From: Schmidtea nova
Lineage: Eukaryota
NCBI GenBank assembly: GCA_044892505.1
Contig: CM097882.1
Location: 393,452,001 to 393,516,000 of the forward strand
Length of the DNA: 64,000 bases
Direction of reading: 5' to 3'
Shown: in pieces, positions 3,043 through 64,000 of the stretch
How positions within the stretch are numbered: the first letter of the stretch is position 1
Layout of the letters: each line of letters begins with the position of its first letter
Position numbers and translations under genes: made by a program
Notes under the pieces: generated by a model
Seen by the model: the letters and a program-made list of their open reading frames with translations, nothing else
Told to the model about the DNA's origin: nothing
Database searches by the model: none

Positions 3043-3279
3043 TCAGGGGTGTGAACAAGTGTTAATGCATGCACATTGAGTTATACGTACATCCACCATG
3101 AATCCCTTGACCAGCGTATTGGTTGATTGTTTGATGCATGTGTATTCATAAGGTAAATTAACAGTGTATTGACTTGGCGAGCAGCATTTACAGGCCGAAT
3201 TTTGCACGAATCCCGGTGGCAATGTTGTAGGGTCATTTAGGAGCATTGCTGAATATTTGTTGAATTTCATTATCGGATT
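3043..3279 (-). CDS. Terminal exon, second half of C-terminal cystine knot (CTCK)
   Basis: Acceptor ttatttag at 3280-3281, phase 0. Reads NPIMKF...SACKCCSP...ITQCACINTCSHP-TGA, with the CxCC and CxC knot motifs. Confidence 0.88.
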   Translation of the reverse strand, partial: NPIMKFNKYSAMLLNDPTTLPPGFVQNSACKCCSPSQYTVNLPYEYTCIKQSTNTLVKGFMVDVRITQCACINTCSHP

Positions 3280-9200: not shown

Positions 9201-12200
9201 AAGGAAAAAATATTATTTGTGTAGTTAAGATATTTTAAAAATAAAAAATAAATATTAAGGTTGTTTTAATATTTCAGGAAATAATTTTTATTTGAGAGAA
9301 ATTTAACAAATAGGAGAATAACAAAGCTTGCTAATAAAATATAGTAAAAGGAAATATTTTCTAAAAATCAGATTCAACAAAATAGATCAATTTTAGAGGT
9401 AATAAAATCTTAATTTTATGAAAATTATTTAATTCAAATCTTATTAAAATAAATCATTAAAATTATTAAATAAACTTACTACAATTTTGGTCTTCCAAAC
9501 ATTCCAAATTGCCAATCTTACATAAACATTTTGCACAATTAAAGTAAACAGTTATGTTGGAGGCTACTGTTTGTCCATCTTCAATGATTTCCATGGGATT
9601 ACTTAGGCCGATTATATCATCCAATTCTACCCAAGCATCGATAATATCTCGATTGATTTTAAATTTAACATCAGAAAATAAAACATCACATTGACAATCA
9701 GAACTGTAGCACGAGTCGTATTGCCTTTCCGTCGTTGAACAATTTCTAGATCGAACTGTAAAGCCATTTCCACAAGAAACATTACACAGGGACCAATCAG
9801 ACCATTCAGAACATATAGGTAATGAGGTTGACAATATAGTAGTAGATATTATCGGGGAACTTGATAATGTGGATAATGTATAAGTTGGAGTAGTTCCAGA
9901 TGTTGACGACACCAATGATGATGTTGATGGTGTTGTTCCAGTTGTGAAGGTAACGGTAGGACTTGTTGTGGTATATCCTGAACTAGCTGTTGATTGAGTT
10001 GATGTGAATGGAGTAGATATTATCGGGGAACTTGATAATGTGGATAATGTATAAGTTGGAGTAGTTCCAGATGTTGACGACACCAATGATGATGTTGATG
10101 GTGTTGTTCCAGTTGTGAAGGTAACGGTAGGACTTGTTGTGGTATATCCTGAACTAGCTGTTGATTGAGTTGATGTGAATGGAGTGGATATTATCGGGGA
10201 ACTTGATAATGTGGATAATGTGAAAGTTGGAGTAGTTCCAGATGTTGAAGATACTTTTGGTGTAAAGCAACCGATAACTTCTAATCCGAATGATATCGTT
10301 GGTTTTGTGAGATCCCTAAATATGTGAATTATCAATTTTTGAAGTATTATTTTCTATTTTTTATAAATTTTTACTGATTAGTTTCGAATATAAATGTATT
10401 ATAAAATAAATTTAATTTGTCTTTTAGTTGTATCTTATGCTTTAGGCATTTGATTTACTGGTTAAAAATAAATTAATTTCGAAATCATAAATATAATAGT
10501 TCTACTTATTTTTATTCTCCAATTTCCTTTTACTAATAAATGGTTTTACTTTAATTATTCATTAAGTTTGGCATAAATTTTCTTTTCATTATAGATGCAT
10601 TTACCAGATCTTAAAGAAAAATATGATGGTTACATATATTAGTTAATTTATATATTCTGTTCAAATTTATGTTCTATTTTTATTTCATTTTGTACTCGAA
10701 TTTCTTTTGTTTAATAATAGAATTTTATTTATTCTTAAATACAAAACATTTTTTTACAAATTATTTTTCCAATCATTCATTTTTTATATTACATAAGTAT
10801 ATATAAAATGTAAAAAACAAATTAATCTTAAATGTAGAAAAACTTATGATATGGAAGATATATAATTAAAGTTTATATCGTACTTATTTTTTTTGTTTCT
10901 TTTCAAAGTTATTCACCTGAAAATTTTACTTGATAACGGCATATGATTTGAAAAGATGTTGAAAATTAGACTAAAATATAATGATTAGCAACTTACAAGC
11001 TTAGTATAGTTGTAATTGTGATTTGTATTCTTTGGACTTCGGAACCTGGATTTACTATTGGGGAAGACAATTTGTCCATCAATTTATTTGAATCTAGTAA
11101 ATCTCTTCCTGTCATTGTTACAGATGATTGGTCACCATTTACAAGAGTGACTGTTAATTTGACAGTTTTGACTAGAAGAGGGGTAGTAGCAACAAGATTG
11201 ATTTCATTGACTGCTGGAGATTGTGTTCCTTAAGACAATTAGTTGTAAATAAAATTTCTGCTTTGATGATAAAATAATTATCATTACCTTTTTGTGTTGG
11301 ATTGACATCGATAATAATCAGTGAACCAGTAATAGATAATCCTGAAGGAGTTCCGAGTTTTTGACTGGAATCAGTTTGTAGTTGATTCGAATCCACAGTA
11401 ACAGTAATATCAGAAGGTGGTATTTTCTATTTTATAATTAGTCATTAATTTTATAAAAAAATTATCTAGTTACATTTGTATCAGACATTCCGTTTTCAAT
11501 TTTACAAAGTGTGGGACTAGTAACAATTTTAGTAGATAATGTATAAGTAGGAGTAGTTCCAGATGATGACGACACCAATGATGATGTTGATGGTGTTGTT
11601 CCAGTTGTGAAGGTAACGGTAGGACTTGTTGTGGTATATCCTGAACTAGCTGTTGATTGAGTTGATGTGAATGGAGTAGATATTATCGGGGAACTTGATA
11701 ATGTGGATAATGTATAAGTTGGAGTAGTTCCAGATGATGACGACACCAATGATGATGTTGATGGTGTTGTTCCAGTTGTGAAGGTAACGGTAGGACTTGT
11801 TGTGGTATATCCTGAACTAGCTGTTGATTGAGTTGATGTGAATGGAGTAGATATTATCGGGGAACTTGATAATGTGGATAATGTATAAGTTGGAGTAGTT
11901 CCAGATGTTGACGACACCAATGATGATGTTGATGGTGTTGTTCCAGTTGTGAAGGTAACGGTAGGACTTGTTGTGGTATATCCTGAACTAGCTGTTGATT
12001 GAGTTGATGTGAATGGAGTAGATATTATCGGGGAACTTGATAATGTGGATAATGTATAAGTTGGAGTAGTTCCAGATGTTGACGACACCAATGATGATGT
12101 TGATGGTTTTGTTCCAGTTGTAAAGGTAACGGCAGGACTTGTTGTGGTATATCCTGAACTAGCTGTTGATTGAGTTGATGTGAATGGAGTGGATATTATC

Positions 12201-48200: not shown

Positions 48201-51200
48201 CTAAATCTCTACCCGTGAAAACTTGAGTCGATTTATCGCCATTATCCAATGTGACTGTCAAAACTACGACTTGAACATTTTCAGTCTTGTCAATGACAAC
48301 ATTGATCTCATTAACTGCAGGTGACTGTGTTTCTACATAAAATTTGGTTATAGAATACATGTTCCTAACAAGATGATATTAGAATTTACCTTTTTTTGTT
48401 GGATTAATTTCGAATACGACTTGTGAACCCGTAACTGGTAAACCTTGGGTTGTTCCGAGTTTTTCACTTGATTCTGTAGGTTGTAAAGTGTTGTCAACAG
48501 TTACTTTGATATCAGATGGTGGAATTGTCTATAGAAATATAGTGAGGTTATTATTCATATTAATCATTTTAGTTTATGTTACATTTTTGTCTGTCATTCC
48601 ATCTTTAACGAGACAAGGTATTGGACTTGTAGTCGTTGTTGTTGGTGCTGTTGTTAGTGTTGGTGTTGTTGTTGCTGATGTTGTGGTGGCAGATGTCGTT
48701 GTTATCGATGGTGTAGTAGTAACTTCTTTTGGAGTGAAGCAACCAATAACTTCTATGCTGATAGCTATTGTTGGATTTGTTTCATTTCTGAAACCATATT
48801 GTGATTATGTGGTTTAATTAATGAAATTTTAAAATTATGGATATAAAAAGAGTTGTTTGACTCATTCCATATTAGTTGCAATATAACAAAACTTACAAAT
48901 TCGGAATTGTTGTAATGACGATTTCAATTTTGTCGATTTCAGTTCCTGGCTTTACTGTTGGTGAAGTCATTTTGTCCAATAACTTTGGAGACTCTTCTAA
49001 ATCTCTACCCGTGAAAACTTGAGTCGATTTATCGCCATTATCCAATGTGACTGTCAAAACTACGACTTGAACATTTTCAGTCTTGTCAATGACAACATTG
49101 ATCTCATTAACTGCAGGTGACTGTGTTTCTACATAAAACTTGGTTATAGAATACATGTTCCTAACAAGATGATATTAGAATTTACCTTTTTTTGTTGGAT
49201 TAATTTCGAATACGACTTGTGAACCCGTAACTGGTAAACCTTGGGTCGTTCCGAGTTTTTCACTTGATTCTGTAGGTTGTAAAGTGTTGTCAACAGTTAC
49301 TTTGATATCAGATGGTGGAATTGTCTATAGAAATATAGTGAGGTTATTATTCATATTAATCATTTTAGTTTATGTTACATTTTTGTCTGTCATTCCATCT
49401 TTAACGAGACAAGGTATTGGACTTGTAGTCGTTGTTGTTGGTGCTGTTGTTAGTGTTGGTGTTGTTGTTGCTGATGTTGTGGTGGCAGATGTCGTTGTTA
49501 TCGATGGTGTAGTAGTAACTTCTTTTGGAGTGAAGCAACCAATAACTTCTATGCTGATAGCTATTGTTGGATTTGTTTCATTTCTGAAACCATATTGTGA
49601 TTATGTGGTTTAATTAATGAAATTTTAAAATTATGGATATAAAAAGAGTTGTTTGACTCATTCCATATTAGTTGCAATATAACAAAACTTACAAATTCGG
49701 AATTGTTGTAATGACGATTTCAATTTTGTCGATTTCAGTTCCTGGCTTTACTGTTGGTGAAGTCATTTTGTCCAATAACTTTGGAGACTCTTCTAAATCT
49801 CTACCCGTGAAAACTTGAGTCGATTTATCGCCATTATCCAATGTGACTGTCAAAACTACGACTTGAACATTTTCAGTCTTGTCAATGACAACATTGATCT
49901 CATTAACTGCAGGTGACTGTGTTTCTACATAAAACTTGGTTATAGAATACATGTTCCTAACAAGATGATATTAGAATTTACCTTTTTTTGTTGGATTAAT
50001 TTCGAATACGACTTGTGAACCCGTAACTGGTAAACCTTGGGTCGTTCCGAGTTTTTCACTTGATTCTGTAGGTTGTAAAGTGTTGTCAACAGTTACTTTG
50101 ATATCAGATGGTGGAATTGTCTATAGAAATATAGTGAGGTTATTATTCATATTAATCATTTTAGTTTATGTTACATTTTTGTCTGTCATTCCATCTTTAA
50201 CGAGACAAGGTATTGGACTTGTAGTCGTTGTTGTTGGTGCTGTTGTTAGTGTTGGTGTTGTTGTTGCTGATGTTGTGGTGGCAGATGTCGTTGTTATCGA
50301 TGGTGTAGTAGTAACTTCTTTTGGAGTGAAGCAACCAATAACTTCTATGCTGATAGCTATTGTTGGATTTGTTTCATTTCTGAAACCATATTGTGATTAT
50401 GTGGTTTAATTAATGAAATTTTAAAATTATGGATATAAAAAGAGTTGTTTGACTCATTCCATATTAGTTGCAATATAACAAAACTTACAAATTCGGAATT
50501 GTTGTAATGACGATTTCAATTTTGTCGATTTCAGTTCCTGGCTTTACTGTTGGTGAAGTCATTTTGTCCAATAACTTTGGAGACTCTTCTAAATCTCTAC
50601 CCGTGAAAACTTGAGTCGATTTATCGCCATTATCCAATGTGACTGTCAAAACTACGACTTGAACATTTTCAGGCTTGTCAATGACAACATTGATCTCATT
50701 AACTGCAGGTGACTGTGTTTCTACATAAAATTTGGTTATAGAATACATGTTCCTAACAAGATGATATTAGAATTTACCTTTTTTTGTTGGATTAATTTCG
50801 AATACGACTTGTGAACCCGTAAATGGTAAACCTTGGGTTGTTCCGAGTTTTTCACTTGATTCTGTAGGTTGTAAAGTGTTGTCAACAGTTACTTTGATAT
50901 CAGATGGTGGAATTGTCTATAGAAATATAGTGAGGTTATTATTCATATTAATCATTTTAGTTTATGTTACATTTTTGTCTGTCATTCCATCTTTAACGAG
51001 ACAAGGTATTGGACTTGTAGTCGTTGTTGTTGGTGCTGTTGTTAGTGTTGGTGTTGTTGTTGCTGATGTTGTGGTGGCAGATGTCGTTGTTATCGATGGT
51101 GTAGTAGTAACTTCTTTTGGAGTGAAGCAACCAATAACTTCTATGCTGATAGCTATTGTTGGATTTGTTTCATTTCTGAAACCATATTGTGATTATGTGG

Positions 51201-54200
51201 TTTAATTAATGAAATTTTAAAATTATGGATATAAAAAGAGTTGTTTGACTCATTCCATATTAGTTGCAATATAACAAAACTTACAAATTCGGAATTGTTG
51301 TAATGACGATTTCAATTTTGTCGATTTCAGTTCCTGGCTTTACTGTTGGTGAAGTCATTTTGTCCAATAACTTTGGAGACTCTTCTAAATCTCTACCCGT
51401 GAAAACTTGAGTCGATTTATCGCCATTATCCAATGTGACTGTCAAAACTACGACTTGAACATTTTCAGGCTTGTCAATGACAACATTGATCTCATTAACT
51501 GCAGGTGACTGTGTTTCTACATAAAATTTGGTTATAGAATACATGTTCCTAACAAGATGATATTAGAATTTACCTTTTTTTGTTGGATTAATTTCGAATA
51601 CGACTTGTGAACCCGTAACTGGTAAACCTTGGGTTGTTCCGAGTTTTTCACTTGATTCTGTAGGTTGTAAAGTGTTGTCAACAGTTACTTTGATATCAGA
51701 TGGTGGAATTGTCTATAGAAATATAGTGAGGTTATTATTCATATTAATCATTTTAGTTTATGTTACATTTTTGTCTGTCATTCCATCTTTAACGAGACAA
51801 GGTATTGGACTTGTAGTCGTTGTTGTTGGTGCTGTTGTTAGTGTTGGTGTTGTTGTTGCTGATGTTGTGGTGGCAGATGTCGTTGTTATCGATGGTGTAG
51901 TAGTAACTTCTTTTGGAGTGAAGCAACCAATAACTTCTATGCTGATAGCTATTGTTGGATTTGTTTCATTTCTGAAACCATATTGTGATTATGTGGTTTA
52001 ATTAATGAAATTTTAAAATTATGGATATAAAAAGAGTTGTTTGACTCATTCCATATTAGTTGCAATATAACAAAACTTACAAATTCGGAATTGTTGTAAT
52101 GACGATTTCAATTTTGTCGATTTCAGTTCCTGGCTTTACTGTTGGTGAAGTCATTTTGTCCAATAACTTTGGAGACTCTTCTAAATCTCTACCCGTGAAA
52201 ACTTGAGTCGATTTATCGCCATTATCCAATGTGACTGTCAAAACTACGACTTGAACATTTTCAGGCTTGTCAATGACAACATTGATCTCATTAACTGCAG
52301 GTGACTGTGTTTCTACATAAAATTTGGTTATAGAATACATGTTCCTAACAAGATGATATTAGAATTTACCTTTTTTTGTTGGATTAATTTCGAATACGAC
52401 TTGTGAACCCGTAACTGGTAAACCTTGGGTTGTTCCGAGTTTTTCACTTGATTCTGTAGGTTGTAAAGTGTTGTCGACAGTTACTTTGATATCAGATGGT
52501 GGAATTGTCTATAGAAATATAGTGAGGTTATTATTCATATTAATCATTTTAGTTTATGTTACATTTTTGTCTGTCATTCCATCTGTAACGAGACAAGGTA
52601 TTGGACTTGTAGTCGTTGTTGTTGGTGCTGTTGTTAGTGTTGGTGTTGTTGTTGCTGATGTTGTGGTGGCAGATGTCGTTGTTATCGATGGTGTAGTAGT
52701 AACTTCTTTTGGAGTGAAGCAACCAATAACTTCTATGCTGATAGCTATTGTTGGATTTGTTTCATTTCTGAAACCATATTGTGATTATGTGGTTTAATTA
52801 ATGAAATTTTAAAATTATGGATATAAAAAGAGTTGTTTGACTCATTCCATATTAGTTGCAATATAACAAAACTTACAAATTCGGAATTGTTGTAATGACG
52901 ATTTCAATTTTGTCGATTTCAGTTCCTGGCTTTACTGTTGGTGAAGTCATTTTGTCCAATAACTTTGGAGACTCTTCTAAATCTCTACCCGTGAAAACTT
53001 GAGTCGATTTATCGCCATTATCCAATGTGACTGTCAAAACTACGACTTGAACATTTTCAGGCTTGTCAATGACAACATTGATCTCATTAACTGCAGGTGA
53101 CTGTGTTTCTACATAAAATTTGGTTATAGAATACATGTTCCTAACAAGATGATATTAGAATTTACCTTTTTTTGTTGGATTAATTTCGAATACGACTTGT
53201 GAACCCGTAAATGGTAAACCTTGGGTTGTTCCGAGTTTTTCACTTGATTCTGTAGGTTGTAAAGTGTTGTCAACAGTTACTTTGATATCAGATGGTGGAA
53301 TTGTCTATAGAAATATAGTGAGGTTATTATTCATATTAATCATTTTAGTTTATGTTACATTTTTGTCTGTCATTCCATCTTTAACGAGACAAGGTATTGG
53401 ACTTGTAGTCGTTGTTGTTGGTGCTGTTGTTAGTGTTGGTGTTGTTGTTGCTGATGTTGTGGTGGCAGATGTCGTTGTTATCGATGGTGTAGTAGTAACT
53501 TCTTTTGGAGTGAAGCAACCAATAACTTCTATGCTGATAGCTATTGTTGGATTTGTTTCATTTCTGAAACCATATTGTGATTATGTGGTTTAATTAATGA
53601 AATTTTAAAATTATGGATATAAAAAGAGTTGTTTGACTCATTCCATATTAGTTGCAATATAACAAAACTTACAAATTCGGAATTGTTGTAATGACGATTT
53701 CAATTTTGTCGATTTCAGTTCCTGGCTTTACTGTTGGTGAAGTCATTTTGTCCAATAACTTTGGAGACTCTTCTAAATCTCTACCCGTGAAAACTTGAGT
53801 CGATTTATCGCCATTATCCAATGTGACTGTCAAAACTACGACTTGAACATTTTCAGGCTTGTCAATGACAACATTGATCTCATTAACTGCAGGTGACTGT
53901 GTTTCTACATAAAATTTGGTTATAGAATACATGTTCCTAACAAGATGATATTAGAATTTACCTTTTTTTGTTGGATTAATTTCGAATACGACTTGTGAAC
54001 CCGTAACTGGTAAACCTTGGGTTGTTCCGAGTTTTTCACTTGATTCTGTAGGTTGTAAAGTGTTGTCAACAGTTACTTTGATATCAGATGGTGGAATTGT
54101 CTATAGAAATATAGTGAGGTTATTATTCATATTAATCATTTTAGTTTATGTTACATTTTTGTCTGTCATTCCATCTTTAACGAGACAAGGTATTGGACTT

Positions 54201-57200
54201 GTAGTCGTTGTTGTTGGTGCTGTTGTTAGTGTTGGTGTTGTTGTTGCTGATGTTGTGGTGGCAGATGTCGTTGTTATCGATGGTGTAGTAGTAACTTCTT
54301 TTGGAGTGAAGCAACCAATAACTTCTATGCTGATAGCTATTGTTGGATTTGTTTCATTTCTGAAACCATATTGTGATTATGTGGTTTAATTAATGAAATT
54401 TTAAAATTATGGATATAAAAAGAGTTGTTTGACTCATTCCATATTAGTTGCAATATAACAAAACTTACAAATTCGGAATTGTTGTAATGACGATTTCAAT
54501 TTTGTCGATTTCAGTTCCTGGCTTTACTGTTGGTGAAGTCATTTTGTCCAATAACTTTGGAGACTCTTCTAAATCTCTACCCGTGAAAACTTGAGTCGAT
54601 TTATCGCCATTATCCAATGTGACTGTCAAAACTACGACTTGAACATTTTCAGGCTTGTCAATGACAACATTGATCTCATTAACTGCAGGTGACTGTGTTT
54701 CTACATAAAATTTGGTTATAGAATACATGTTCCTAACAAGATGATATTAGAATTTACCTTTTTTTGTTGGATTAATTTCGAATACGACTTGTGAACCCGT
54801 AACTGGTAAACCTTGGGTTGTTCCGAGTTTTTCACTTGATTCTGTAGGTTGTAAAGTGTTGTCGACAGTTACTTTGATATCAGATGGTGGAATTGTCTAT
54901 AGAAATATAGTGAGGTTATTATTCATATTAATCATTTTAGTTTATGTTACATTTTTGTCTGTCATTCCATCTGTAACGAGACAAGGTATTGGACTTGTAG
55001 TCGTTGTTGTTGGTGCTGTTGTTAGTGTTGGTGTTGTTGTTGCTGATGTTGTGGTGGCAGATGTCGTTGTTATCGATGGTGTAGTAGTAACTTCTTTTGG
55101 AGTGAAGCAACCAATAACTTCTATGCTGATAGCTATTGTTGGATTTGTTTCATTTCTGAAACCATATTGTGATTATGTGGTTTAATTAATGAAATTTTAA
55201 AATTATGGATATAAAAAGAGTTGTTTGACTCATTCCATATTAGTTGCAATATAACAAAACTTACAAATTCGGAATTGTTGTAATGACGATTTCAATTTTG
55301 TCGATTTCAGTTCCTGGCTTTACTGTTGGTGAAGTCATTTTGTCCAATAACTTTGGAGACTCTTCTAAATCTCTACCCATGAAAACTTGAGTCGATTTAT
55401 CGCCATTATCCAATGTGACTGTCAAAACTACGACTTGAACATTTTCAGGCTTGTCAATGACAACATTGATCTCATTAACTGCAGGTGACTGTGTTTCTAC
55501 ATAAAATTTGGTTATAGAATACATGTTCCTAACAAGATGATATTAGAATTTACCTTTTTTTGTTGGATTAATTTCGAATACGACTTGTGAACCCGTAACT
55601 GGTAAACCTTGGGTTGTTCCGAGTTTTTCACTTGATTCTGTAGGTTGTAAAGTGTTGTCGACAGTTACTTTGATATCAGATGGTGGAATTGTCTATAGAA
55701 ATATAGTGAGGTTATTATTCATATTAATCATTTTAGTTTATGTTACATTTTTGTCTGTCATTCCATCTTTAACGAGACAAGGTATTGGACTTGTAGTCGT
55801 TGTTGTTGGTGCTGTTGTTAGTGTTGGTGTTGTTGTTGCTGATGTTGTGGTGGCAGATGTCGTTGTTATCGATGGTGTAGTAGTAACTTCTTTTGGAGTG
55901 AAGCAACCAATAACTTCTATGCTGATAGCTATTGTTGGATTTGTTTCATTTCTGAAACCATATTGTGATTATGTGGTTTAATTAATGAAATTTTAAAATT
56001 ATGGATATAAAAAGAGTTGTTTGACTCATTCCATATTAGTTGCAATATAACAAAACTTACAAATTCGGAATTGTTGTAATGACGATTTCAATTTTGTCGA
56101 TTTCAGTTCCTGGCTTTACTGTTGGTGAAGTCATTTTGTCCAATAACTTTGGAGACTCTTCTAAATCTCTACCCGTGAAAACTTGAGTCGATTTATCGCC
56201 ATTATCCAATGTGACTGTCAAAACTACGACTTGAACATTTTCAGGCTTGTCAATGACAACATTGATCTCATTAACTGCAGGTGACTGTGTTTCTACATAA
56301 AATTTGGTTATAGAATACATGTTCCTAACAAGATGATATGAGAATTTACCTTTTTTTGTTGGATTAATTTCGAATACGACTTGTGAACCCGTAACTGGTA
56401 AACCTTGGGTTGTTCCGAGTTTTTCACTTGATTCTGTAGGTTGTAAAGTGTTGTCAACAGTTACTTTGATATCAGATGGTGGAATTGTCTATAGAAATAT
56501 AGTGAGGTTATTATTCATATTAATCATTTTAGTTTATGTTACATTTTTGTCTGTCATTCCATCTTTAACGAGACAAGGTATTGGACTTGTAGTCGTTGTT
56601 GTTGGTGCTGTTGTTAGTGTTGGTGTTGTTGTTGCTGATGTTGTGGTGGCAGATGTCGTTGTTATCGATGGTGTAGTAGTAACTTCTTTTGGAGTGAAGC
56701 AACCAATAACTTCTATGCTGATAGCTATTGTTGGATTTGTTTCATTTCTGAAACCATATTGTGATTATGTGGTTTAATTAATGAAATTTTAAAATTATGG
56801 ATATAAAAAGAGTTGTTTGACTCATTCCATATTAGTTGCAATATAACAAAACTTACAAATTCGGAATTGTTGTAATGACGATTTCAATTTTGTCGATTTC
56901 AGTTCCTGGCTTTACTGTTGGTGAAGTCATTTTGTCCAATAACTTTGGAGACTCTTCTAAATCTCTACCCGTGAAAACTTGAGTCGATTTATCGCCATTA
57001 TCCAATGTGACTGTCAAAACTACGACTTGAACATTTTCAGGCTTGTCAATGACAACATTGATCTCATTAACTGCAGGTGACTGTGTTTCTACATAAAATT
57101 TGGTTATAGAATACATGTTCCTAACAAGATGATATTAGAATTTACCTTTTTTTGTTGGATTAATTTCGAATACGACTTGTGAACCCGTAACTGGTAAACC

Positions 57201-60200
57201 TTGGGTCGTTCCGAGTTTTTCACTTGATTCTGTAGGTTGTAAAGTGTTGTCGACAGTTACTTTGATATCAGATGGTGGAATTGTCTATAGAAATATAGTG
57301 AGGTTATTATTCATATTAATCATTTTAGTTTATGTTACATTTTTGTCTGTCATTCCATCTTTAACGAGACAAGGTATTGGACTTGTAGTCGTTGTTGTTG
57401 GTGCTGTTGTTAGTGTTGGTGTTGTTGTTGCTGATGTTGTGGTGGCAGATGTCGTTGTTATCGATGGTGTAGTAGTAACTTCTTTTGGAGTGAAGCAACC
57501 AATAACTTCTATGCTGATAGCTATTGTTGGATTTGTTTCATTTCTGAAACCATATTGTGATTATGTGGTTTAATTAATGAAATTTTAAAATTATGGATAT
57601 AAAAAGAGTTGTTTGACTCATTCCATATTAGTTGCAATATAACAAAACTTACAAATTCGGAATTGTTGTAATGACGATTTCAATTTTGTCGATTTCAGTT
57701 CCTGGCTTTACTGTTGGTGAAGTCATTTTGTCCAATAACTTTGGAGACTCTTCTAAATCTCTACCCGTGAAAACTTGAGTCGATTTATCGCCATTATCCA
57801 ATGTGACTGTCAAAACTACGACTTGAACATTTTCAGGCTTGTCAATGACAACATTGATCTCATTAACTGCAGGTGACTGTGTTTCTACATAAAATTTGGT
57901 TATAGAATACATGTTCCTAACAAGATGATATTAGAATTTACCTTTTTTTGTTGGATTAATTTCGAATACGACTTGTGAACCCGTAACTGGTAAACCTTGG
58001 GTTGTTCCGAGTTTTTCACTTGATTCTGTAGGTTGTAAAGTGTTGTCAACAGTTACTTTGATATCAGATGGTGGAATTGTCTATAGAAATATAGTGAGGT
58101 TATTATTCATATTAATCATTTTAGTTTATGTTACATTTTTGTCTGTCATTCCATCTTTAACGAGACAAGGTATTGGACTTGTAGTCGTTGTTGTTGGTGC
58201 TGTTGTTAGTGTTGGTGTTGTTGTTGCTGATGTTGTGGTGGCAGATGTCGTTGTTATCGATGGTGTAGTAGTAACTTCTTTTGGAGTGAAGCAACCAATA
58301 ACTTCTATGCTGATAGCTATTGTTGGATTTGTTTCATTTCTGAAACCATATTGTGATTATGTGGTTTAATTAATGAAATTTTAAAATTATGGATATAAAA
58401 AGAGTTGTTTGACTCATTCCATATTAGTTGCAATATAACAAAACTTACAAATTCGGAATTGTTGTAATGACGATTTCAATTTTGTCGATTTCAGTTCCTG
58501 GCTTTACTGTTGGTGAAGTCATTTTGTCCAATAACTTTGGAGACTCTTCTAAATCTCTACCCGTGAAAACTTGAGTCGATTTATCGCCATTATCCAATGT
58601 GACTGTCAAAACTACGACTTGAACATTTTCAGGCTTGTCAATGACAACATTGATCTCATTAACTGCAGGTGACTGTGTTTCTACATAAAATTTGGTTATA
58701 GAATACATGTTCCTAACAAGATGATATTAGAATTTACCTTTTTTTGTTGGATTAATTTCGAATACGACTTGTGAACCCGTAACTGGTAAACCTTGGGTTG
58801 TTCCGAGTTTTTCACTTGATTCTGTAGGTTGTAAAGTGTTGTCAACAGTTACTTTGATATCAGATGGTGGAATTGTCTATAGAAATATAGTGAGGTTATT
58901 ATTCATATTAATCATTTTAGTTTATGTTACATTTTTGTCTGTCATTCCATCTTTAACGAGACAAGGTATTGGACTTGTAGTCGTTGTTGTTGGTGCTGTT
59001 GTTAGTGTTGGTGTTGTTGTTGCTGATGTTGTGGTGGCAGATGTCGTTGTTATCGATGGTGTAGTAGTAACTTCTTTTGGAGTGAAGCAACCAATAACTT
59101 CTATGCTGATAGCTATTGTTGGATTTGTTTCATTTCTGAAACCATATTGTGATTATGTGGTTTAATTAATGAAATTTTAAAATTATGGATATAAAAAGAG
59201 TTGTTTGACTCATTCCATATTAGTTGCAATATAACAAAACTTACAAATTCGGAATTGTTGTAATGACGATTTCAATTTTGTCGATTTCAGTTCCTGGCTT
59301 TACTGTTGGTGAAGTCATTTTGTCCAATAACTTTGGAGACTCTTCTAAATCTCTACCCGTGAAAACTTGAGTCGATTTATCGCCATTATCCAATGTGACT
59401 GTCAAAACTACGACTTGAACATTTTCAGGCTTGTCAATGACAACATTGATCTCATTAACTGCAGGTGACTGTGTTTCTACATAAAATTTGGTTATAGAAT
59501 ACATGTTCCTAACAAGATGATATTAGAATTTACCTTTTTTTGTTGGATTAATTTCGAATACGACTTGTGAACCCGTAACTGGTAAACCTTGGGTCGTTCC
59601 GAGTTTTTCACTTGATTCTGTAGGTTGTAAAGTGTTGTCGACAGTTACTTTGATATCAGATGGTGGAATTGTCTATAGAAATATAGTGAGGTTATTATTC
59701 ATATTAATCATTTTAGTTTATGTTACATTTTTGTCTGTCATTCCATCTTTAACGAGACAAGGTATTGGACTTGTAGTCGTTGTTGTTGGTGCTGTTGTTA
59801 GTGTTGGTGTTGTTGTTGCTGATGTTGTGGTGGCAGATGTCGTTGTTATCGATGGTGTAGTAGTAACTTCTTTTGGAGTGAAGCAACCAATAACTTCTAT
59901 GCTGATAGCTATTGTTGGATTTGTTTCATTTCTGAAACCATATTGTGATTATGTGGTTTAATTAATGAAATTTTAAAATTATGGATATAAAAAGAGTTGT
60001 TTGACTCATTCCATATTAGTTGCAATATAACAAAACTTACAAATTCGGAATTGTTGTAATGACGATTTCAATTTTGTCGATTTCAGTTCCTGGCTTTACT
60101 GTTGGTGAAGTCATTTTGTCCAATAACTTTGGAGACTCTTCTAAATCTCTACCCGTGAAAACTTGAGTCGATTTATCGCCATTATCCAATGTGACTGTCA

Positions 60201-63200
60201 AAACTACGACTTGAACATTTTCAGGCTTGTCAATGACAACATTGATCTCATTAACTGCAGGTGACTGTGTTTCTACATAAAATTTGGTTATAGAATACAT
60301 GTTCCTAACAAGATGATATTAGAATTTACCTTTTTTTGTTGGATTAATTTCGAATACGACTTGTGAACCCGTAACTGGTAAACCTTGGGTTGTTCCGAGT
60401 TTTTCACTTGATTCTGTAGGTTGTAAAGTGTTGTCAACAGTTACTTTGATATCAGATGGTGGAATTGTCTATAGAAATATAGTGAGGTTATTATTCATAT
60501 TAATCATTTTAGTTTATGTTACATTTTTGTCTGTCATTCCATCTTTAACGAGACAAGGTATTGGACTTGTAGTCGTTGTTGTTGGTGCTGTTGTTAGTGT
60601 TGGTGTTGTTGTTGCTGATGTTGTGGTGGCAGATGTCGTTGTTATCGATGGTGTAGTAGTAACTTCTTTTGGAGTGAAGCAACCAATAACTTCTATGCTG
60701 ATAGCTATTGTTGGATTTGTTTCATTTCTGAAACCATATTGTGATTATGTGGTTTAATTAATGAAATTTTAAAATTATGGATATAAAAAGAGTTGTTTGA
60801 CTCATTCCATATTAGTTGCAATATAACAAAACTTACAAATTCGGAATTGTTGTAATGACGATTTCAATTTTGTCGATTTCAGTTCCTGGCTTTACTGTTG
60901 GTGAAGTCATTTTGTCCAATAACTTTGGAGACTCTTCTAAATCTCTACCCGTGAAAACTTGAGTCGATTTATCGCCATTATCCAATGTGACTGTCAAAAC
61001 TACGACTTGAACATTTTCAGGCTTGTCAATGACAACATTGATCTCATTAACTGCAGGTGACTGTGTTTCTACATAAAATTTGGTTATAGAATACATGTTC
61101 CTAACAAGATGATATTAGAATTTACCTTTTTTTGTTGGATTAATTTCGAATACGACTTGTGAACCCGTAACTGGTAAACCTTGGGTTGTTCCGAGTTTTT
61201 CACTTGATTCTGTAGGTTGTAAAGTGTTGTCAACAGTTACTTTGATATCAGATGGTGGAATTGTCTATAGAAATATAGTGAGGTTATTATTCATATTAAT
61301 CATTTTAGTTTATGTTACATTTTTGTCTGTCATTCCATCTTTAACGAGACAAGGTATTGGACTTGTAGTCGTTGTTGTTGGTGCTGTTGTTAGTGTTGGT
61401 GTTGTTGTTGCTGATGTTGTGGTGGCAGATGTCGTTGTTATCGATGGTGTAGTAGTAACTTCTTTTGGAGTGAAGCAACCAATAACTTCTATGCTGATAG
61501 CTATTGTTGGATTTGTTTCATTTCTGAAACCATATTGTGATTATGTGGTTTAATTAATGAAATTTTAAAATTATGGATATAAAAAGAGTTGTTTGACTCA
61601 TTCCATATTAGTTGCAATATAACAAAACTTACAAATTCGGAATTGTTGTAATGACGATTTCAATTTTGTCGATTTCAGTTCCTGGCTTTACTGTTGGTGA
61701 AGTCATTTTGTCCAATAACTTTGGAGACTCTTCTAAATCTCTACCCGTGAAAACTTGAGTCGATTTATCGCCATTATCCAATGTGACTGTCAAAACTACG
61801 ACTTGAACATTTTCAGGCTTGTCAATGACAACATTGATCTCATTAACTGCAGGTGACTGTGTTTCTACATAAAATTTGGTTATAGAATACATGTTCCTAA
61901 CAAGATGATATTAGAATTTACCTTTTTTTGTTGGATTAATTTCGAATACGACTTGTGAACCCGTAACTGGTAAACCTTGGGTCGTTCCGAGTTTTTCACT
62001 TGATTCTGTAGGTTGTAAAGTGTTGTCGACAGTTACTTTGATATCAGATGGTGGAATTGTCTATAGAAATATAGTGAGGTTATTATTCATATTAATCATT
62101 TTAGTTTATGTTACATTTTTGTCTGTCATTCCATCTTTAACGAGACAAGGTATTGGACTTGTAGTCGTTGTTGTTGGTGCTGTTGTTAGTGTTGGTGTTG
62201 TTGTTGCTGATGTTGTGGTGGCAGATGTCGTTGTTATCGATGGTGTAGTAGTAACTTCTTTTGGAGTGAAGCAACCAATAACTTCTATGCTGATAGCTAT
62301 TGTTGGATTTGTTTCATTTCTGAAACCATATTGTGATTATGTGGTTTAATTAATGAAATTTTAAAATTATGGATATAAAAAGAGTTGTTTGACTCATTCC
62401 ATATTAGTTGCAATATAACAAAACTTACAAATTCGGAATTGTTGTAATGACGATTTCAATTTTGTCGATTTCAGTTCCTGGCTTTACTGTTGGTGAAGTC
62501 ATTTTGTCCAATAACTTTGGAGACTCTTCTAAATCTCTACCCGTGAAAACTTGAGTCGATTTATCGCCATTATCCAATGTGACTGTCAAAACTACGACTT
62601 GAACATTTTCAGGCTTGTCAATGACAACATTGATCTCATTAACTGCAGGTGACTGTGTTTCTACATAAAATTTGGTTATAGAATACATGTTCCTAACAAG
62701 ATGATATTAGAATTTACCTTTTTTTGTTGGATTAATTTCGAATACGACTTGTGAACCCGTAACTGGTAAACCTTGGGTTGTTCCGAGTTTTTCACTTGAT
62801 TCTGTAGGTTGTAAAGTGTTGTCAACAGTTACTTTGATATCAGATGGTGGAATTGTCTATAGAAATATAGTGAGGTTATTATTCATATTAATCATTTTAG
62901 TTTATGTTACATTTTTGTCTGTCATTCCATCTTTAACGAGACAAGGTATTGGACTTGTAGTCGTTGTTGTTGGTGCTGTTGTTAGTGTTGGTGTTGTTGT
63001 TGCTGATGTTGTGGTGGCAGATGTCGTTGTTATCGATGGTGTAGTAGTAACTTCTTTTGGAGTGAAGCAACCAATAACTTCTATGCTGATAGCTATTGTT
63101 GGATTTGTTTCATTTCTGAAACCATATTGTGATTATGTGGTTTAATTAATGAAATTTTAAAATTATGGATATAAAAAGAATTGTTTGACTCATTCCATAT

Positions 63201-63911
63201 TAGTTGCAATATAACAAAACTTACAAATTCGGAATTGTTGTAATGACGATTTCAATTTTGTCGATTTCAGTTCCTGGCTTTACTGTTGGTGAAGTCATTT
63301 TGTCCAATAACTTTGGAGACTCTTCTAAATCTCTACCCGTGAAAACTTGAGTCGATTTATCGCCATTATCCAATGTGACTGTCAAAACTACGACTTGAAC
63401 ATTTTCAGGCTTGTCAATGACAACATTGATCTCATTAACTGCAGGTGACTGTGTTTCTACATAAAATTTGGTTATAGAATACATGTTCCTAACAAGATGA
63501 TATTAGAATTTACCTTTTTTTGTTGGATTAATTTCGAATACGACTTGTGAACCCGTAACTGGTAAACCTTGGGTCGTTCCGAGTTTTTCACTTGATTCTG
63601 TAGGTTGTAAAGTGTTGTCAACAGTTACTTTGATATCAGATGGTGGAATTGTCTATAGAAATATAGTGAGGTTATTATTCATATTAATCATTTTAGTTTA
63701 TGTTACATTTTTGTCTGTCATTCCATCTTTAACGAGACAAGGTATTGGACTTGTAGTCGTTGTTGTTGGTGCTGTTGTTAGTGTTGGTGTTGTTGTTGCT
63801 GATGTTGTGGTGGCAGATGTCGTTGTTATCGATGGTGTAGTAGTAACTTCTTTTGGAGTGAAGCAACCAATAACTTCTATGCTGATAGCTATTGTTGGAT
63901 TTGTTTCATTT
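3043..63911 (-). CDS. Giant multi-exon gel-forming-mucin / SCO-spondin-like secreted protein (3' part; 5' end beyond window), about 13,800 aa in window
   Basis: GT-AG exons were traced manually with compatible phases from 63911 to the stop at 3043, except across the N gap. Content: PTS repeats, a 151-aa two-Cys domain x39, LDLa-like, TSP1, TIL, VWC-like modules and a cystine knot. Summed exon length is about 41.4 kb including the 275 N. Confidence 0.85.
3328..3666 (-). CDS. Exon: VWC-like module end and first half of cystine knot
   Basis: Acceptor tttttttcag at 3667-3668; donor GTATGG at 3327; phases 0/0. Reads NGQTKKDTNSCQLYLC...HCCY...CKVNT...TICGGGC (CxGxC knot motif). Confidence 0.85.
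4335..5029 (-). CDS. Exon(s) spanning the N gap: VWC end, TSP1, TIL, VWC start
   Basis: Acceptor tctttag at 5030-5031, phase 2: (C)TCRQGKWIC...DCQWSDWKIVSPCNVTCGKGVQILERT. After the gap: CEQTCDD...CEEGCRCQPGFVRNINNTCVPSSEC. Donor CAG/GTTAGT at 4334. Internal structure is unknown across the Ns. Confidence 0.7.
4577..4851. other. Assembly gap (275 N) inside coding region
   Basis: Run of N from 4577 to 4851. Confidence 1.
5085..5349 (-). CDS. Exon: TIL domain plus VWC-like start
   Basis: Acceptor ttgcatag; donor TG/GTAAAA; phases 1/2. Reads CVAPKQLLSCVNPCEQRCGDLSKRCTNIDCIESCACPDNMLEQDGQCVSKSEC. Confidence 0.88.
5415..5600 (-). CDS. Exon: atypical TSP1-like module
   Basis: Acceptor ttaatcag; donor A/GTAAAA; phases 1/1. 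Reads DCKVLTYETSEC...CDTSCGHGMVTKT...GGKNCEVVYEPCYLGNC. Confidence 0.82.
5653..5830 (-). CDS. Exon: TSP1-like module
   Basis: Acceptor acaag; donor G/GTAGAG; phases 0/1. Reads VNCVMGQWINETTCNAQCC...ITQVRD...CETNRTIPCQMECP. Confidence 0.82.
5881..6041 (-). CDS. Exon: TSP1 repeat
   Basis: Acceptor caataag; donor CAA/GTATAA; phases 1/0. Reads ATWNEWSAWSICSGNCPNGTRSRDRIC...CVGPRIETEPC. Confidence 0.88.
6092..6150 (-). CDS. Small exon (59 nt), end of VWC-like module
   Basis: Acceptor caatctag; donor A/GTAATA; phases 2/1, matching both neighbours. Reads (C)FCNFTGQRECQPSNEDNKP. Confidence 0.78.
6278..6574 (-). CDS. Exon: Cys module end, TSP1 repeat, VWC-like start
   Basis: Acceptor tttttag; donor TG/GTGAGT; phases 2/2. 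Reads ETGVCENGQAVC...CSWNQWQDWSPCNKVCGASNQTRIR...GQSCIGTDSDVKPC. The listed ORF 6366-6584 is the wrong frame. Confidence 0.88.
7168..7421 (+). mobile_element. Probable Helitron 3'-end relic (helicase C-terminus fragment plus CTAG end) within an intron
   Basis: 7168-7284 translates to SRVASQVKVLIESNPQQGNLLNDQRQFTRNVVFQDVLQ*, resembling the Helitron RepHel C-terminus (SRV...VKV...QG.L....FT.NVV..E/D.L*). A GC-rich cgggcgcCTAG followed by T lies at 7411-7422. Confidence 0.55.
7910..8126 (-). CDS. Exon: TIL domain
   Basis: Acceptor cttaag; donor TG/GTTAGT; phases 1/2. Reads CSGNKIQIACHNVTCPRTCDD...CITGCFCKPGYVEDMLGNCVLSDTC. Confidence 0.88.
8177..8512 (-). CDS. Exon: two TSP1 repeats
   Basis: Acceptor tttcttag; donor A/GTACGT; phases 1/1. 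Reads DCQWSRWSEWSECSGGC...KIRSR and CEWSPWSHWTECSQNCGGGTTNKTR. Confidence 0.9.
9480..10315 (-). CDS. Exon: end of last two-Cys domain, 2 PTS repeats, TSP1, VWC-like module
   Basis: Acceptor atatttag at 10316-10317, phase 2; donor A/GTAAGT at 9479. Reads DLTKPTISFGLEVIGC...CSEWSDWSLCNVSCGNGFTVRSRNC...CAKCLCKIGNLEC. Confidence 0.9.
10997..12320 (-). CDS. Array-1 unit: exons 11474-12320 (4 PTS repeats), 11288-11426, 10997-11228
   Basis: GT-AG introns of 47, 59 and 681 bp; phases 0, 1, 2. Encodes ...CKIENGMSDTN/KIPPSDITVT...NPTQK/GTQSPAVNEIN...ITTILSL. Confidence 0.9.
13002..14496 (-). CDS. Array-1 unit: exons 13479-14496 (5 repeats), 13293-13431, 13002-13233
   Basis: Same splice sites and phases as the 10997 unit; 349-aa ORF fragment. 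Confidence 0.88.
15178..17527 (-). CDS. Array-1 unit: exons 15655-17527 (10 repeats), 15469-15607, 15178-15409
   Basis: Same splice sites; 634-aa ORF fragment. Confidence 0.88.
18209..19874 (-). CDS. Array-1 unit: exons 18686-19874 (6 repeats), 18500-18638, 18209-18440
   Basis: Same splice sites; 406-aa ORF fragment. Confidence 0.88.
20556..22221 (-). CDS. Array-1 unit: exons 21033-22221 (6 repeats), 20847-20985, 20556-20787
   Basis: Same splice sites; 406-aa ORF fragment. Confidence 0.88.
22903..24910 (-). CDS. Array-1 unit: exons 23380-24910 (8 repeats), 23194-23332, 22903-23134
   Basis: Same splice sites; 520-aa ORF fragment. Confidence 0.88.
25592..28283 (-). CDS. Array-1 unit: exons 26069-28283 (12 repeats), 25883-26021, 25592-25823
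   Basis: Same splice sites; 748-aa ORF fragment. Confidence 0.88.
28965..30972 (-). CDS. Array-1 unit: exons 29442-30972 (8 repeats), 29256-29394, 28965-29196
   Basis: Same splice sites; 520-aa ORF fragment. Confidence 0.88.
31654..33661 (-). CDS. Array-1 unit: exons 32131-33661 (8 repeats), 31945-32083, 31654-31885
   Basis: Same splice sites; 520-aa ORF fragment. Confidence 0.88.
34343..35495 (-). CDS. Array-1 unit: exons 34820-35495 (3 repeats), 34634-34772, 34343-34574
   Basis: Same splice sites; 235-aa ORF fragment. Confidence 0.88.
36177..38013 (-). CDS. Array-1 unit: exons 36654-38013 (7 repeats), 36468-36606, 36177-36408
   Basis: Same splice sites; 463-aa ORF fragment. Confidence 0.88.
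38695..40702 (-). CDS. Array-1 unit: exons 39172-40702 (8 repeats), 38986-39124, 38695-38926
   Basis: Same splice sites; 520-aa ORF fragment. Confidence 0.88.
41384..42891 (-). CDS. First array-1 unit: exons 41861-42891 (unique Thr-rich lead plus 4 full repeats), 41675-41813, 41384-41615
   Basis: Acceptor aataaatag at 42892-42893, phase 1. Reads TETTESTTIITEVTENIATTKLTTTKRTTTKPSTP..., in frame with ORF 41849-42646. Confidence 0.85.
42935..43215 (-). CDS. Junction exon: end of array-2 domain, Thr-rich stretch, LDLa-like six-Cys module
   Basis: Acceptor ggtttcag, phase 2; donor G/GTAAAT, phase 1; 43-bp intron to the next exon. Reads NETNPTIAISIEVIGC...YCEIEETFCEDIMGNMICAKNCDNIAECKNPNLDEPLSCK. 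This exon is missing from the ORF track. Confidence 0.82.
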
Positions 63912-64000
63912 CTGAAACCATATTGTGATTATGTGGTTTAATTAATGAAATTTTAAAATTATGGATATAAAAAGAGTTGTTTGACTCATTCCATATTAGT
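43126..64000. repeat. Array 2: 26 tandem copies of a 796-bp three-exon/three-intron unit (continues past window end)
   Basis: ORF fragments recur at exactly 43321+796k (k=0..25). Only scattered substitutions and no indels were seen. Confidence 0.98.
43325..63911 (-). CDS. Array-2 exons: A 43807-44011 (205 nt), B 43614-43752 (139 nt), C 43325-43556 (232 nt), each +796k; 192 aa per unit
   Basis: Introns of 54 bp (GTAACA..TAG), 57 bp (GTAAAT..TAG) and 109 bp (GTAAGT..CAG); phases 0, 1, 2; 576 coding + 220 intronic = 796 bp. Unit: NETNPTIAISIEVIGCFTPKEVTTTPSITTTSATTTSATTTPTLTTAPTTTTTSPIPCLVKDGMTDKN/TIPPSDIKVTVDNTLQPTESSEKLGTTQGLPVTGSQVVFEINPTKK/ETQSPAVNEINVVIDKPENVQVVVLTVTLDNGDKSTQVFTGRDLEESPKLLDKMTSPTVKPGTEIDKIEIVITTIPNL. 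Confidence 0.9.

What the first reader, a model, noticed from the sequence alone, without database searches (positions are those of the whole stretch)
10997..63911. Unrecognised 151-aa two-Cys, Trp-free domain repeated 39 times, resembling a degenerate F5/8 type C (discoidin) fold
Seen: in both arrays the domain runs exactly 151 aa from C-x4-GM (CLVKDGM / CKIENGM) through IPPSDI to EVIGC, with alternating hydrophobic beta-strand patterns, no other Cys and no Trp. Known: F5/8C domains are about 150-160 aa, start C..LGM...I..SQI, end LRxELxGC with these two Cys disulfide-linked, and occur in hemolectin and SCO-spondin. Inference: a divergent discoidin-like beta-sandwich that lost the usual Trp residues and takes the place of CysD, perhaps as a multivalent cross-linker or glycan binder.
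Basis: partly seen in the sequence, partly recalled or inferred. Interest (0 to 1): 0.8.

Follow-up and report, generated by a model that had tools for sequence, protein, structure and literature searches.

The report
Orphan Cys-capped bead domain in giant planarian mucin
A giant flatworm-type slime or glue gene really does string at least 39 copies of a 151-residue, two-cysteine, beta-rich domain between sugar-carrying linkers. The domain has no detectable sequence relatives, and only indirect hints link it to the discoidin (F5/8C) fold.

Summary
On the minus strand there are 39 complete copies, plus the last exon of a 40th, of a 151-aa domain. Each copy is built from four exons with canonical GT..AG sites. 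It has exactly two Cys (first and last residue) and no Trp, Tyr or His.

The two arrays are 57% identical without gaps, with dN/dS about 0.29. Independent DNA runs hold the 796-bp unit at 13-26 times the depth of the flank. The domains alternate with Thr/Ser/Pro linkers in a stop-free stretch of more than 12,000 aa. This ends in TSP1, TIL and cystine-knot modules, the same layout as flatworm adhesion protein 2 (two arrays of "repeats of unknown function" plus C-terminal TSP1/TIL).

A profile of the largest exon found no true relative among 1.84 billion proteins. Pfam, PDB and metagenome searches were also blank.

The discoidin reading is only partly supported:
- Protein-language-model neighbours of the largest exon are F5_F8_type_C, CBM32 and other galactose-binding-like clusters.
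- Length, terminal Cys and terminal motifs fit.
- PF00754 does not match the exon pieces, and the family's aromatic core is absent.

The whole spliced domain has no reference, so it could not be folded or scanned. Glycan binding looks unlikely. First-reader notes on three other windows of this genome describe similar arrays; these are unverified.

The parts
43167..63739 (-). Array 2: 26 complete 796-bp units. Each is a 151-aa domain (4 exons, CLVKDGM...EVIGC) plus a 41-aa Thr-rich linker.
   Evidence: Copies are 99.7% identical including introns. DNA-run unitig at 13-26 times flank depth.
63863..63911 (-). Last exon (exon 4) of a 40th domain copy. Its earlier exons lie beyond the window end.
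   Evidence: The 40th EVIGC, in register with the 796-bp period.
63707..63739 (-). Example unit of array 2, exon 1 part of the domain (11 codons, C-x4-GM). It is continuous with the preceding linker and exon 4 in one exon.
63514..63652 (-). Example unit of array 2, exon 2 (residues 12-58, IPPSDI).
63225..63456 (-). Example unit of array 2, exon 3 (residues 58-135, the core strands).
   Evidence: AF2 of this piece gave pLDDT 75.8 with three long strands.
63067..63115 (-). Example unit of array 2, exon 4 part of the domain (residues 135-151, ending EVIGC).
10267..41893 (-). Array 1: 13 units. Each is a 151-aa domain (CKIENGM...EVIGC, same exon geometry, intron 3 of 681 nt) plus a linker of 198-711 aa made of 57-aa PTS repeats.
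26130..28216 (-). Longest PTS linker: 12.2 copies of the 171-bp (57-aa) Thr/Ser/Pro repeat. Linkers are 61% Ser+Thr.
42939..43052 (-). Small six-Cys module at the junction of the two arrays, followed by a short intron.
   Evidence: sequence. The Pfam LNR hit is only E 0.15, so the type is not settled.
9694..9810 (-). First TSP1 repeat after the last domain and linker.
   Evidence: Pfam TSP_1 E 4.6e-07.
8148..8531 (-). Two TSP1 repeats in one exon.
   Evidence: Pfam TSP1_spondin E 2.5e-16 and TSP_1 E 2.1e-12.
5183..5341 (-). TIL domain.
   Evidence: Pfam TIL E 1.6e-07.
4368..4532 (-). Second TIL domain, just below the N run 4577-4851, which was left untouched.
   Evidence: Pfam TIL E 1.4e-08.
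3043..3684 (-). Probable C-terminal cystine knot in two exons, with motifs C-G-G-G-C, C-C-S-P and C-A-C, followed by a stop.
   Evidence: Read by eye. There is no Pfam hit on the separate exons, so this is inferred.

Best explanation
The 151-aa unit is a real, selectively maintained, compact beta-rich extracellular domain. It sits in a giant secreted glycoprotein of a planarian-type flatworm.

Its first and last residues are its only Cys. They most likely form one disulfide that ties the two ends together. Each domain would then hang as a closed 'bead' between O-glycosylated Thr/Ser/Pro rods.

The fold is most likely a very diverged member of the galactose-binding-domain-like / discoidin (F5/8C, CBM32) superfamily that has lost the usual aromatic core and ligand-loop residues.

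The protein has the plan of flatworm adhesion protein 2, and of SCO-spondin-like mucins: two successive arrays of large repeats, then TSP1, TIL and a cystine knot for tail-to-tail dimerisation.

I infer that the acidic, unglycosylated beads (pI 4.5-4.8) break up the mucin brush and give protein surfaces for non-covalent cohesion. This could be self-association or binding of cationic partners. I do not think they act as lectins.

Shown here: the copies, exon structure, purifying selection, copy number in DNA, flanking domains and lack of sequence relatives. Inferred: the disulfide, the fold, glycosylation, secretion and the role.
For: Structure and selection:
- Regular 4-exon units with canonical splice sites; 39 copies.
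- dN/dS 0.29 between arrays.
- 12,083 stop-free codons.
- DNA runs confirm the amplified unit.

Shape of the domain:
- Conserved alternating hydrophobic stretches give about 7-8 strands, and there is no internal duplication.
- AF2 of exon 3 alone gives three long strands at pLDDT about 80.

Leads to the discoidin / galactose-binding-like superfamily:
- ESM-Atlas feature neighbours are F5_F8_type_C, CBM32, NedA-like GBD and NADase_transloc F5/8C.
- A faint Pfam galactose-binding-like hit.
- F5_F8 domains are typical of lophotrochozoan mucin-like proteins (PMC4948705).

Context:
- The C-terminus carries TSP1 and TIL.
- Published ap2 has the same layout: Mlig-ap2 has 21x255 aa plus 25x221 aa repeats and C-terminal TSP1 (PMC6410801). 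Tmed-ap2 has 8x330 plus 12x230 aa repeats, 3 TSP1 and a TIL (PMC9229212). Mile-ap2 is similar (PMC6745481).
Against: - There is no significant profile match to PF00754 or any other family for exons 2 and 3.
- There is no PDB sequence match.
- The Atlas scores (0.77-0.90) are in the range the tool calls 'lead only', and exon 2 gave nothing.
- The domain lacks Trp, Tyr and His, which are prominent in known discoidin domains.
- There is no RNA evidence for this organism.
- The N-terminus of the gene is outside the window.
- Sequence homology to ap2 was not tested.
Confidence: 0.5

Rival explanations
1. The domain is a lineage-specific beta-sandwich with no evolutionary link to discoidin. It would be either a new fold or a convergent Cys-capped module. 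The terminal-motif resemblance and the language-model neighbours would then reflect only generic features of all-beta, Thr/Val-rich extracellular domains.
For: - No true relatives among 1.84 billion representatives. The two listed hits are repeat proteins with at most 7 bits per repeat.
- No Pfam, PDB or metagenome match.
- Atlas scores are below or at 0.9. The tool says shuffled proteins reach 0.9 or more 4-10 times in 100, and 0.8 or more a third of the time.
- There are no aromatic core residues.
Against: - Two exon-3 variants only 59% identical both draw the same set of galactose-binding-like families.
- Length, the positions of the two Cys and both terminal motifs are collinear with F5/8C.
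- The family is known in mucin-like proteins of this superphylum.
Confidence: 0.3
2. The unit is an Ig-like or FN3-like sandwich with long insertions, as in bacterial and animal adhesins.
For: - The top hit in the large protein search is an invasin-like protein with Ig-like repeats. It shares a short T-V-T-x-x-x-R-D-L stretch with the domain.
Against: - The invasin match is at most 7 bits per repeat over about 38 residues.
- 151 aa is half as long again as an Ig or FN3 domain, and there is no internal duplication.
- No Pfam Ig or FN3 hit passes threshold; the nearest is an Ig-like row (PA_Ig-like) at E 0.092, well under its cutoff.
Confidence: 0.1
3. The unit is not an independently folded globule. 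It is a beta-prone segment that forms intermolecular cross-beta or disulfide-linked networks after secretion, as proposed for some marine glues. The two Cys would make inter-chain bonds.
For: - Long runs of alternating Val/Ile/Thr.
- A review of amyloid-like structures in adhesive proteins exists (PMC12472103, listed but not read).
- Both Cys are at the very edges, next to the linkers.
Against: - The length is strictly conserved at 151 aa with no indel between arrays that are 43% diverged.
- Turn motifs are conserved (N-G-D, G-R-D-L, N-P-T), and purifying selection acts over the whole length.
- The AF2 fragment is confident.
- All three points are typical of a globular domain.
Confidence: 0.07

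Closest known systems
F5/8 type C (discoidin) domains, Pfam PF00754 / CBM32, as found in hemolectin, SCO-spondin and lophotrochozoan mucin-like proteins
   Same: - About 150 aa, with Cys at both ends.
- The start C-x4-GM...I-x4-I and the end E-[VL]-x-G-C match the family motifs as I recall them.
- All-beta, with about 8 strands.
- Sits in a mucin/spondin-type protein, and F5_F8 is characteristic of lophotrochozoan mucin-like proteins (PMC4948705).
- The language-model neighbours are this family.
   Different: - No profile match on the exon pieces.
- No Trp, Tyr or His.
- Repeated at least 39 times and alternating with PTS linkers, instead of 1-3 copies between D assemblies.
- The fold was not verified.
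Flatworm adhesion protein 2 (Mlig-ap2, Mile-ap2a/b, Tmed-ap2)
   Same: - A giant secreted Thr-rich glycoprotein.
- Most of its length is two successive arrays of large near-identical repeats 'of unknown function'.
- These are followed by C-terminal TSP1 repeats and TIL (PMC6410801; PMC6745481; PMC9229212; PMC8621496).
- This gene has at least 26 x 192 aa, then 13 x 349-862 aa, then TSP1/TIL.
   Different: - Sequence homology was not tested, and the published repeats are said not to be conserved between taxa.
- Tmed-ap2 is Lys-rich (22.5%), whereas this domain is acidic.
- The published descriptions read here mention no cystine knot and no Cys-capped domain.
- Tissue of expression is unknown here.
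CysD domains (Mucin2_WxxW) of MUC2/MUC5-type gel-forming mucins
   Same: Small folded, poorly glycosylated domains that interrupt long PTS regions and are thought to give non-covalent cross-links.
   Different: CysD is about 100 aa with many Cys and a WxxW motif (PMC4948705). This domain has 2 Cys and no Trp, and is unrelated by sequence.
SEA-domain 'beads on a string' mucins noted elsewhere in this genome
   Same: Giant PTS rods punctuated by one kind of small folded domain (scan notes s1-385605 and s1-408919; unverified by me).
   Different: The domain differs: there is no SEA match and no G-S-V-V-V-type cleavage motif here. The linkers are far shorter.

Membership tests
F5/8 type C (discoidin, PF00754/CBM32) | Module of about 150 aa bounded by an N-terminal and a C-terminal Cys that pair with each other | tested here: inconclusive
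   Length 151 aa, with Cys only at positions 1 and 151 in all 39 copies. The disulfide itself cannot be tested with these tools.
F5/8 type C (discoidin, PF00754/CBM32) | Significant match to the family profile | tested here: not met
   hmmscan of exon 2 (46 aa) and exon 3 (76 aa, both types) lists no PF00754 row at E <= 1. The whole spliced domain could not be submitted because it has no reference.
F5/8 type C (discoidin, PF00754/CBM32) | Conserved aromatic residues (the Trp of the first PROSITE signature, as I recall it) | tested here: not met
   No Trp, Tyr or His, and 1-2 Phe.
F5/8 type C (discoidin, PF00754/CBM32) | C-terminal signature ending [GE]-[LIVP]-x-G-C (recalled from PROSITE) | tested here: inconclusive
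   E-V-I-G-C is present in all copies. The [LM]-R that I recall upstream of it is replaced by I-S or F-G. The pattern is quoted from memory.
F5/8 type C (discoidin, PF00754/CBM32) | Eight-stranded distorted jelly-roll with adjacent termini | not testable with these tools
   Only exon 3 could be folded (pLDDT 75.8, three strands). Fold searches of that fragment are noise.
Flatworm adhesion protein 2 (ap2) | Two successive arrays of large repeats that make up most of a giant protein | tested here: met
   At least 26 units of 192 aa, then 13 units of 349-862 aa, for more than 12,000 aa. Compare.
Flatworm adhesion protein 2 (ap2) | C-terminal TSP1 repeats and TIL domain(s) | tested here: met
   Pfam TSP_1/TSP1_spondin and two TIL hits.
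Flatworm adhesion protein 2 (ap2) | N-terminal vWD/C8/TIL/LDL region with a signal peptide | not testable with these tools
   The 5' part of the gene lies beyond position 64000.
Flatworm adhesion protein 2 (ap2) | Expression in adhesive gland cells, presence in footprints, and a non-adhesive RNAi phenotype | not testable with these tools
   No RNA run is served for this organism.
Flatworm adhesion protein 2 (ap2) | Sequence homology to a published ap2 | not tested
   Published ap2 proteins are outside the length range that the word search can reach from any stop-free piece of this gene.
CysD (Mucin2_WxxW) | WxxW motif and multiple conserved Cys | tested here: not met
   No Trp and only two Cys. 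No Pfam hit.
Gel-forming mucin / SCO-spondin-type protein | PTS regions plus a C-terminal cystine knot | tested here: inconclusive
   PTS linkers are 61% Ser+Thr. The knot motifs C-x-G-x-C, C-C-x-P and C-x-C were read by eye, but no Pfam hit falls on the split exons. D assemblies were not seen in the window.

The most novel reading that the evidence does not exclude
The large 'repeats of unknown function' that make up about three quarters of flatworm glue protein ap2 are, at least in planarians, Cys-capped discoidin-like beads joined by O-glycosylated linkers. This gene would then be the triclad ap2. Its acidic beads would pair electrostatically with the polycationic bead arrays noted elsewhere in the same genome, giving a two-component, charge-switchable glue or slime.
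Probability: 0.12. Interest if true: 0.7.

Novelty: new variant of a known kind. Interest (0 to 1): 0.45.

Why it matters
Flatworm mucus and temporary glue proteins are giant and repeat-rich. The papers read here say their repeat units are of unknown function and cannot be assembled from short reads. This window gives a complete, base-level view of two such arrays.

Each unit is a conserved, disulfide-capped folded domain plus a mucin linker, not low-complexity sequence. If the domain is a stripped-down discoidin fold, a well-known binding module has been turned into an aromatic-free structural bead and amplified about 40-fold. If it is not, it is an orphan extracellular domain under selection.

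Either way it gives a concrete module to express and test for cohesion and adhesion.

Tried and rejected
1. Getting the whole spliced domain into Pfam, PDB, AlphaFold or the Atlas. There is no reference for a spliced product, and a joined reference is not accepted. The tools refuse read-through of stops, and I did not type the 151 residues. These steps were therefore left out.

2. Looking for a stored protein or spliced transcript that holds the domain. All of these were blank:
- Word search with exon 3.
- Full HMMER search of 1.84 billion representatives. Its two hits are repeat proteins with at most 7 bits per repeat.
- Metagenome scans by peptide pattern and by an exon2-exon3 junction.
- tblastn against plasmids and phages. 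The one broad plasmid hit lies in no matching reading frame.

3. Folding exon 3 alone. The model is moderately confident, but Foldseek/PDB, Atlas and VIA-wide searches gave only noise.

4. RNA support. No RNA run is served for this organism, and the four runs laid are DNA, with introns present, no joints and a Nextera adapter.

5. Internal duplication of the domain: none.

6. I looked for a local profile library in the script machine to run hhalign against discoidin: none is present.

7. The SI of PMC6410801 holds the ap2 repeat alignments only as images.

The N run 4577-4851 was left untouched.
Full report
**What is there**

The window is AT-rich (about 30% G+C). From about 3,000 to its upper end it carries one very large gene on the minus strand.

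A motif scan of the minus strand finds C-x4-GM 39 times, IPPSDI 39 times and EVIGC 40 times, in a perfectly regular register. I read two units base by base and applied the same exon model to all copies. The result:
- Every domain has four coding pieces of 33, 139, 232 and 49 nt, which gives 453 nt or 151 aa.
- Three introns separate them, in phases 0, 1 and 2.
- All 117 introns start GT and end AG.

The upper array (63739 to 43167) has 26 units with a 796-bp period. Each unit is a domain beginning CLVKDGM plus a 41-aa linker that is 61% Ser+Thr and 15% Pro.

The lower array (41893 to 10267) has 13 units. The domain begins CKIENGM and intron 3 is 681 nt. The linker holds a variable number (2 to 12) of a 57-aa Thr/Ser/Pro repeat.

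A 40th EVIGC at 63877-63863 is the last exon of a copy cut by the window end, so the array goes on beyond the window.

All copies have exactly two Cys, as first and last residue. They have no Trp, and also no Tyr or His. Only the stated start is off: 10997 is the end of exon 3 of the last copy, and its exon 4 lies at 10315-10267.

**Is it real and under selection?**

- Within each array the copies are 99.7% identical, introns included.
- Between arrays the domains are 57% identical in protein with no gap and the same exon geometry. The short introns 1 and 2 align over only about 60% of their columns, and intron 3 is 109 nt in one array against 681 nt in the other.
- Between the two types, dN is 0.315 and dS is 1.10, so dN/dS is 0.29.
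- Domains plus linkers give 12,083 codons without a stop.
- Four public runs of the same organism hold the unit with its introns. It appears as an 826-nt circular unitig (796+30) at word depth 128-182, against 7-12 on the unique array junction. This implies roughly 13-26 copies. These runs carry a Nextera adapter and show no splice joints, so they are DNA.
- No RNA run is served for this organism, so expression and splicing rest on sequence logic alone.

**The rest of the gene**

At the junction of the two arrays sits a small six-Cys module (42939-43052), followed by a short intron. Its best Pfam row is LNR at E 0.15, so its type is open.

Below the last domain come, in order:
- A TSP1 repeat (9694-9810).
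- Two more TSP1 repeats in one exon (8148-8531).
- Further TSP1-like exons.
- Two TIL domains (5183-5341 and 4368-4532).
- Two exons (3684-3043) with the C-x-G-x-C, C-C-x-P and C-x-C motifs of a C-terminal cystine knot. These were read by eye and have no Pfam support on the split pieces.

The N run at 4577-4851 was left alone.

Follow-up reports on other windows of this genome call it planarian-type because of Burro elements. I did not test this. The base composition and the 47-59-nt introns fit.

**Search for relatives of the domain**

The spliced domain has no reference, so only its exons could be searched.
- Pfam gives nothing for exon 2 or exon 3. The best rows are a faint SAC9 galactose-binding-like row at E 0.11 (type 2) and an anthrax PA Ig-like row at E 0.092 (type 1).
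- The word search with exon 3 is blank.
- A two-sequence profile of exon 3, searched by HMMER against 1.84 billion representatives, lists two proteins. Both are repeat proteins: a bacterial invasin-like protein and a short repeat protein. Each repeat gives at most 7 bits over a short T-V-T...R-D-L-like stretch. They are not relatives.
- PDB sequence searches with exon 3 and exon 2 profiles are blank.
- Two metagenome scans, one of them for a spliced exon2-exon3 junction, are blank.
- tblastn against plasmids and phages is blank. The one broad plasmid hit lies in no matching reading frame.

At the sequence level the domain is an orphan. One caveat applies: planarian gene models and transcripts seem to be absent from these libraries.

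**Fold**

The only positive pointers are indirect.

The ESM-Atlas feature search with exon 3 of array 2 returns clusters at 0.88-0.90 that carry PF00754 F5_F8_type_C, F5_F8_type_C_2, a NedA-like galactose-binding domain and CBM32. Nine of the ten best hits with a family share a family or clan.

Exon 3 of array 1, which is 59% identical, returns the same families plus NADase_transloc (an F5/8C domain) and DUF5000/Sad1_UNC. The scores are lower, at 0.77-0.82.

Exon 2 returns nothing.

The tool itself rates such scores as leads only.

From my own memory of the family, these features are collinear with F5/8C domains of comparable length:
- The start C-x4-GM-x5-I-x4-I.
- A central L-D-N-G-D turn.
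- An F-x-G-R-D stretch, which resembles F-x-G-N-x-D.
- The end E-V-I-G-C.

Conserved alternating hydrophobic stretches suggest seven or eight strands, and the two halves of the domain are not related to each other.

It could not be run here.

**Reading**

The domain is real, folded and selected. Its termini are very probably tied by a Cys1-Cys151 bond, so each domain hangs as a closed bead between mucin-type linkers. Tension along the chain would then pass through the disulfide and not through the fold.

I put about even odds on a strongly diverged discoidin / galactose-binding-like fold. I give 0.3 to an unrelated or new beta sandwich, and little to Ig/FN3-like or cross-beta readings.

Carbohydrate-binding modules of this superfamily normally use aromatic side chains, and here there is no Trp, Tyr or His. 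The domain is acidic (pI 4.5 and 4.8, net charge -9 and -3). Cohesion through protein-protein or charge interactions is the more likely role.

**Comparison with what is known**

Lang et al. report F5_F8 domains as characteristic of lophotrochozoan mucin-like proteins, with CysD domains inserted near them (PMC4948705). A discoidin-type module in a flatworm mucin is therefore not new in kind.

The overall plan matches flatworm adhesion protein 2:
- Mlig-ap2 (14,794 aa) has N-terminal vWD/TIL/LDL, then 21 repeats of 255 aa, then 25 repeats of 221 aa, then several TSP1. It carries Gal-beta1-3-GalNAc (PMC6410801).
- Tmed-ap2 has 8 x 330 aa and 12 x 230 aa repeats, then three TSP1 and one TIL (PMC9229212).
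- Mile-ap2a/b has at least 12 Thr-rich repeats plus three TSP1 and a TIL (PMC6745481).

Those papers call the repeats 'of unknown function'. They note that the repeats are not conserved in sequence between taxa and need good genomes to be studied.

This window shows the same plan at base resolution. It suggests that each repeat is a Cys-capped folded domain plus a mucin linker. Whether this gene is an ap2 homologue, or a slime mucin with a convergent plan, was not tested.

First-reader notes on three other windows of this genome describe similar Cys-capped arrays of about 154 aa and call them 'discoidin-like'. One of those arrays follows three D assemblies, and one is strongly cationic. These notes are unverified, but they suggest a family of such genes.

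**Verdict**

- Observation: confirmed.
- Interpretation: partly supported. The discoidin-like fold is plausible but unproven, and the lectin role is unlikely.
- Novelty: a new variant of known kinds (a discoidin-bearing lophotrochozoan mucin, or a flatworm ap2-type repeat protein) with an orphan domain sequence.
- Interest: moderate.

Noticed in passing
window 42939-43052 (-): A single six-Cys module lies exactly at the junction between the two repeat arrays, and a short intron follows it. The best Pfam row is only LNR at E 0.15. By eye it also resembles an LDL-receptor class A module.
   Followed up: partly
window 10316-41860 (-), linkers of array 1: The number of 57-aa PTS repeats between otherwise near-identical domains varies widely, giving linkers of 198 to 711 aa. 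Four linkers have exactly the same length (483 aa), which suggests recent block duplications of several units.
   Followed up: partly
window 43100-44800, runs X1-X4: Depth of the 796-bp unit relative to the unique junction differs between samples, at about 13x, 18x, 18x and 26x. This may reflect copy-number variation of the array between individuals, or only noise in contig depth.
   Followed up: no
window 4577-4851: An N run of 275 bases lies inside the C-terminal TSP1/TIL region of the gene, just above the second TIL domain.
   Followed up: no
same genome, other windows (notes s1-408920, s1-399582, s1-356176): First-reader notes describe further arrays of Cys-capped ~154-aa 'discoidin-like' domains. 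One follows three D assemblies. One is extremely cationic and is repeated 112 times. Together with the acidic domain here, this hints at a family of bead-on-string genes with opposite charges.
   Followed up: no
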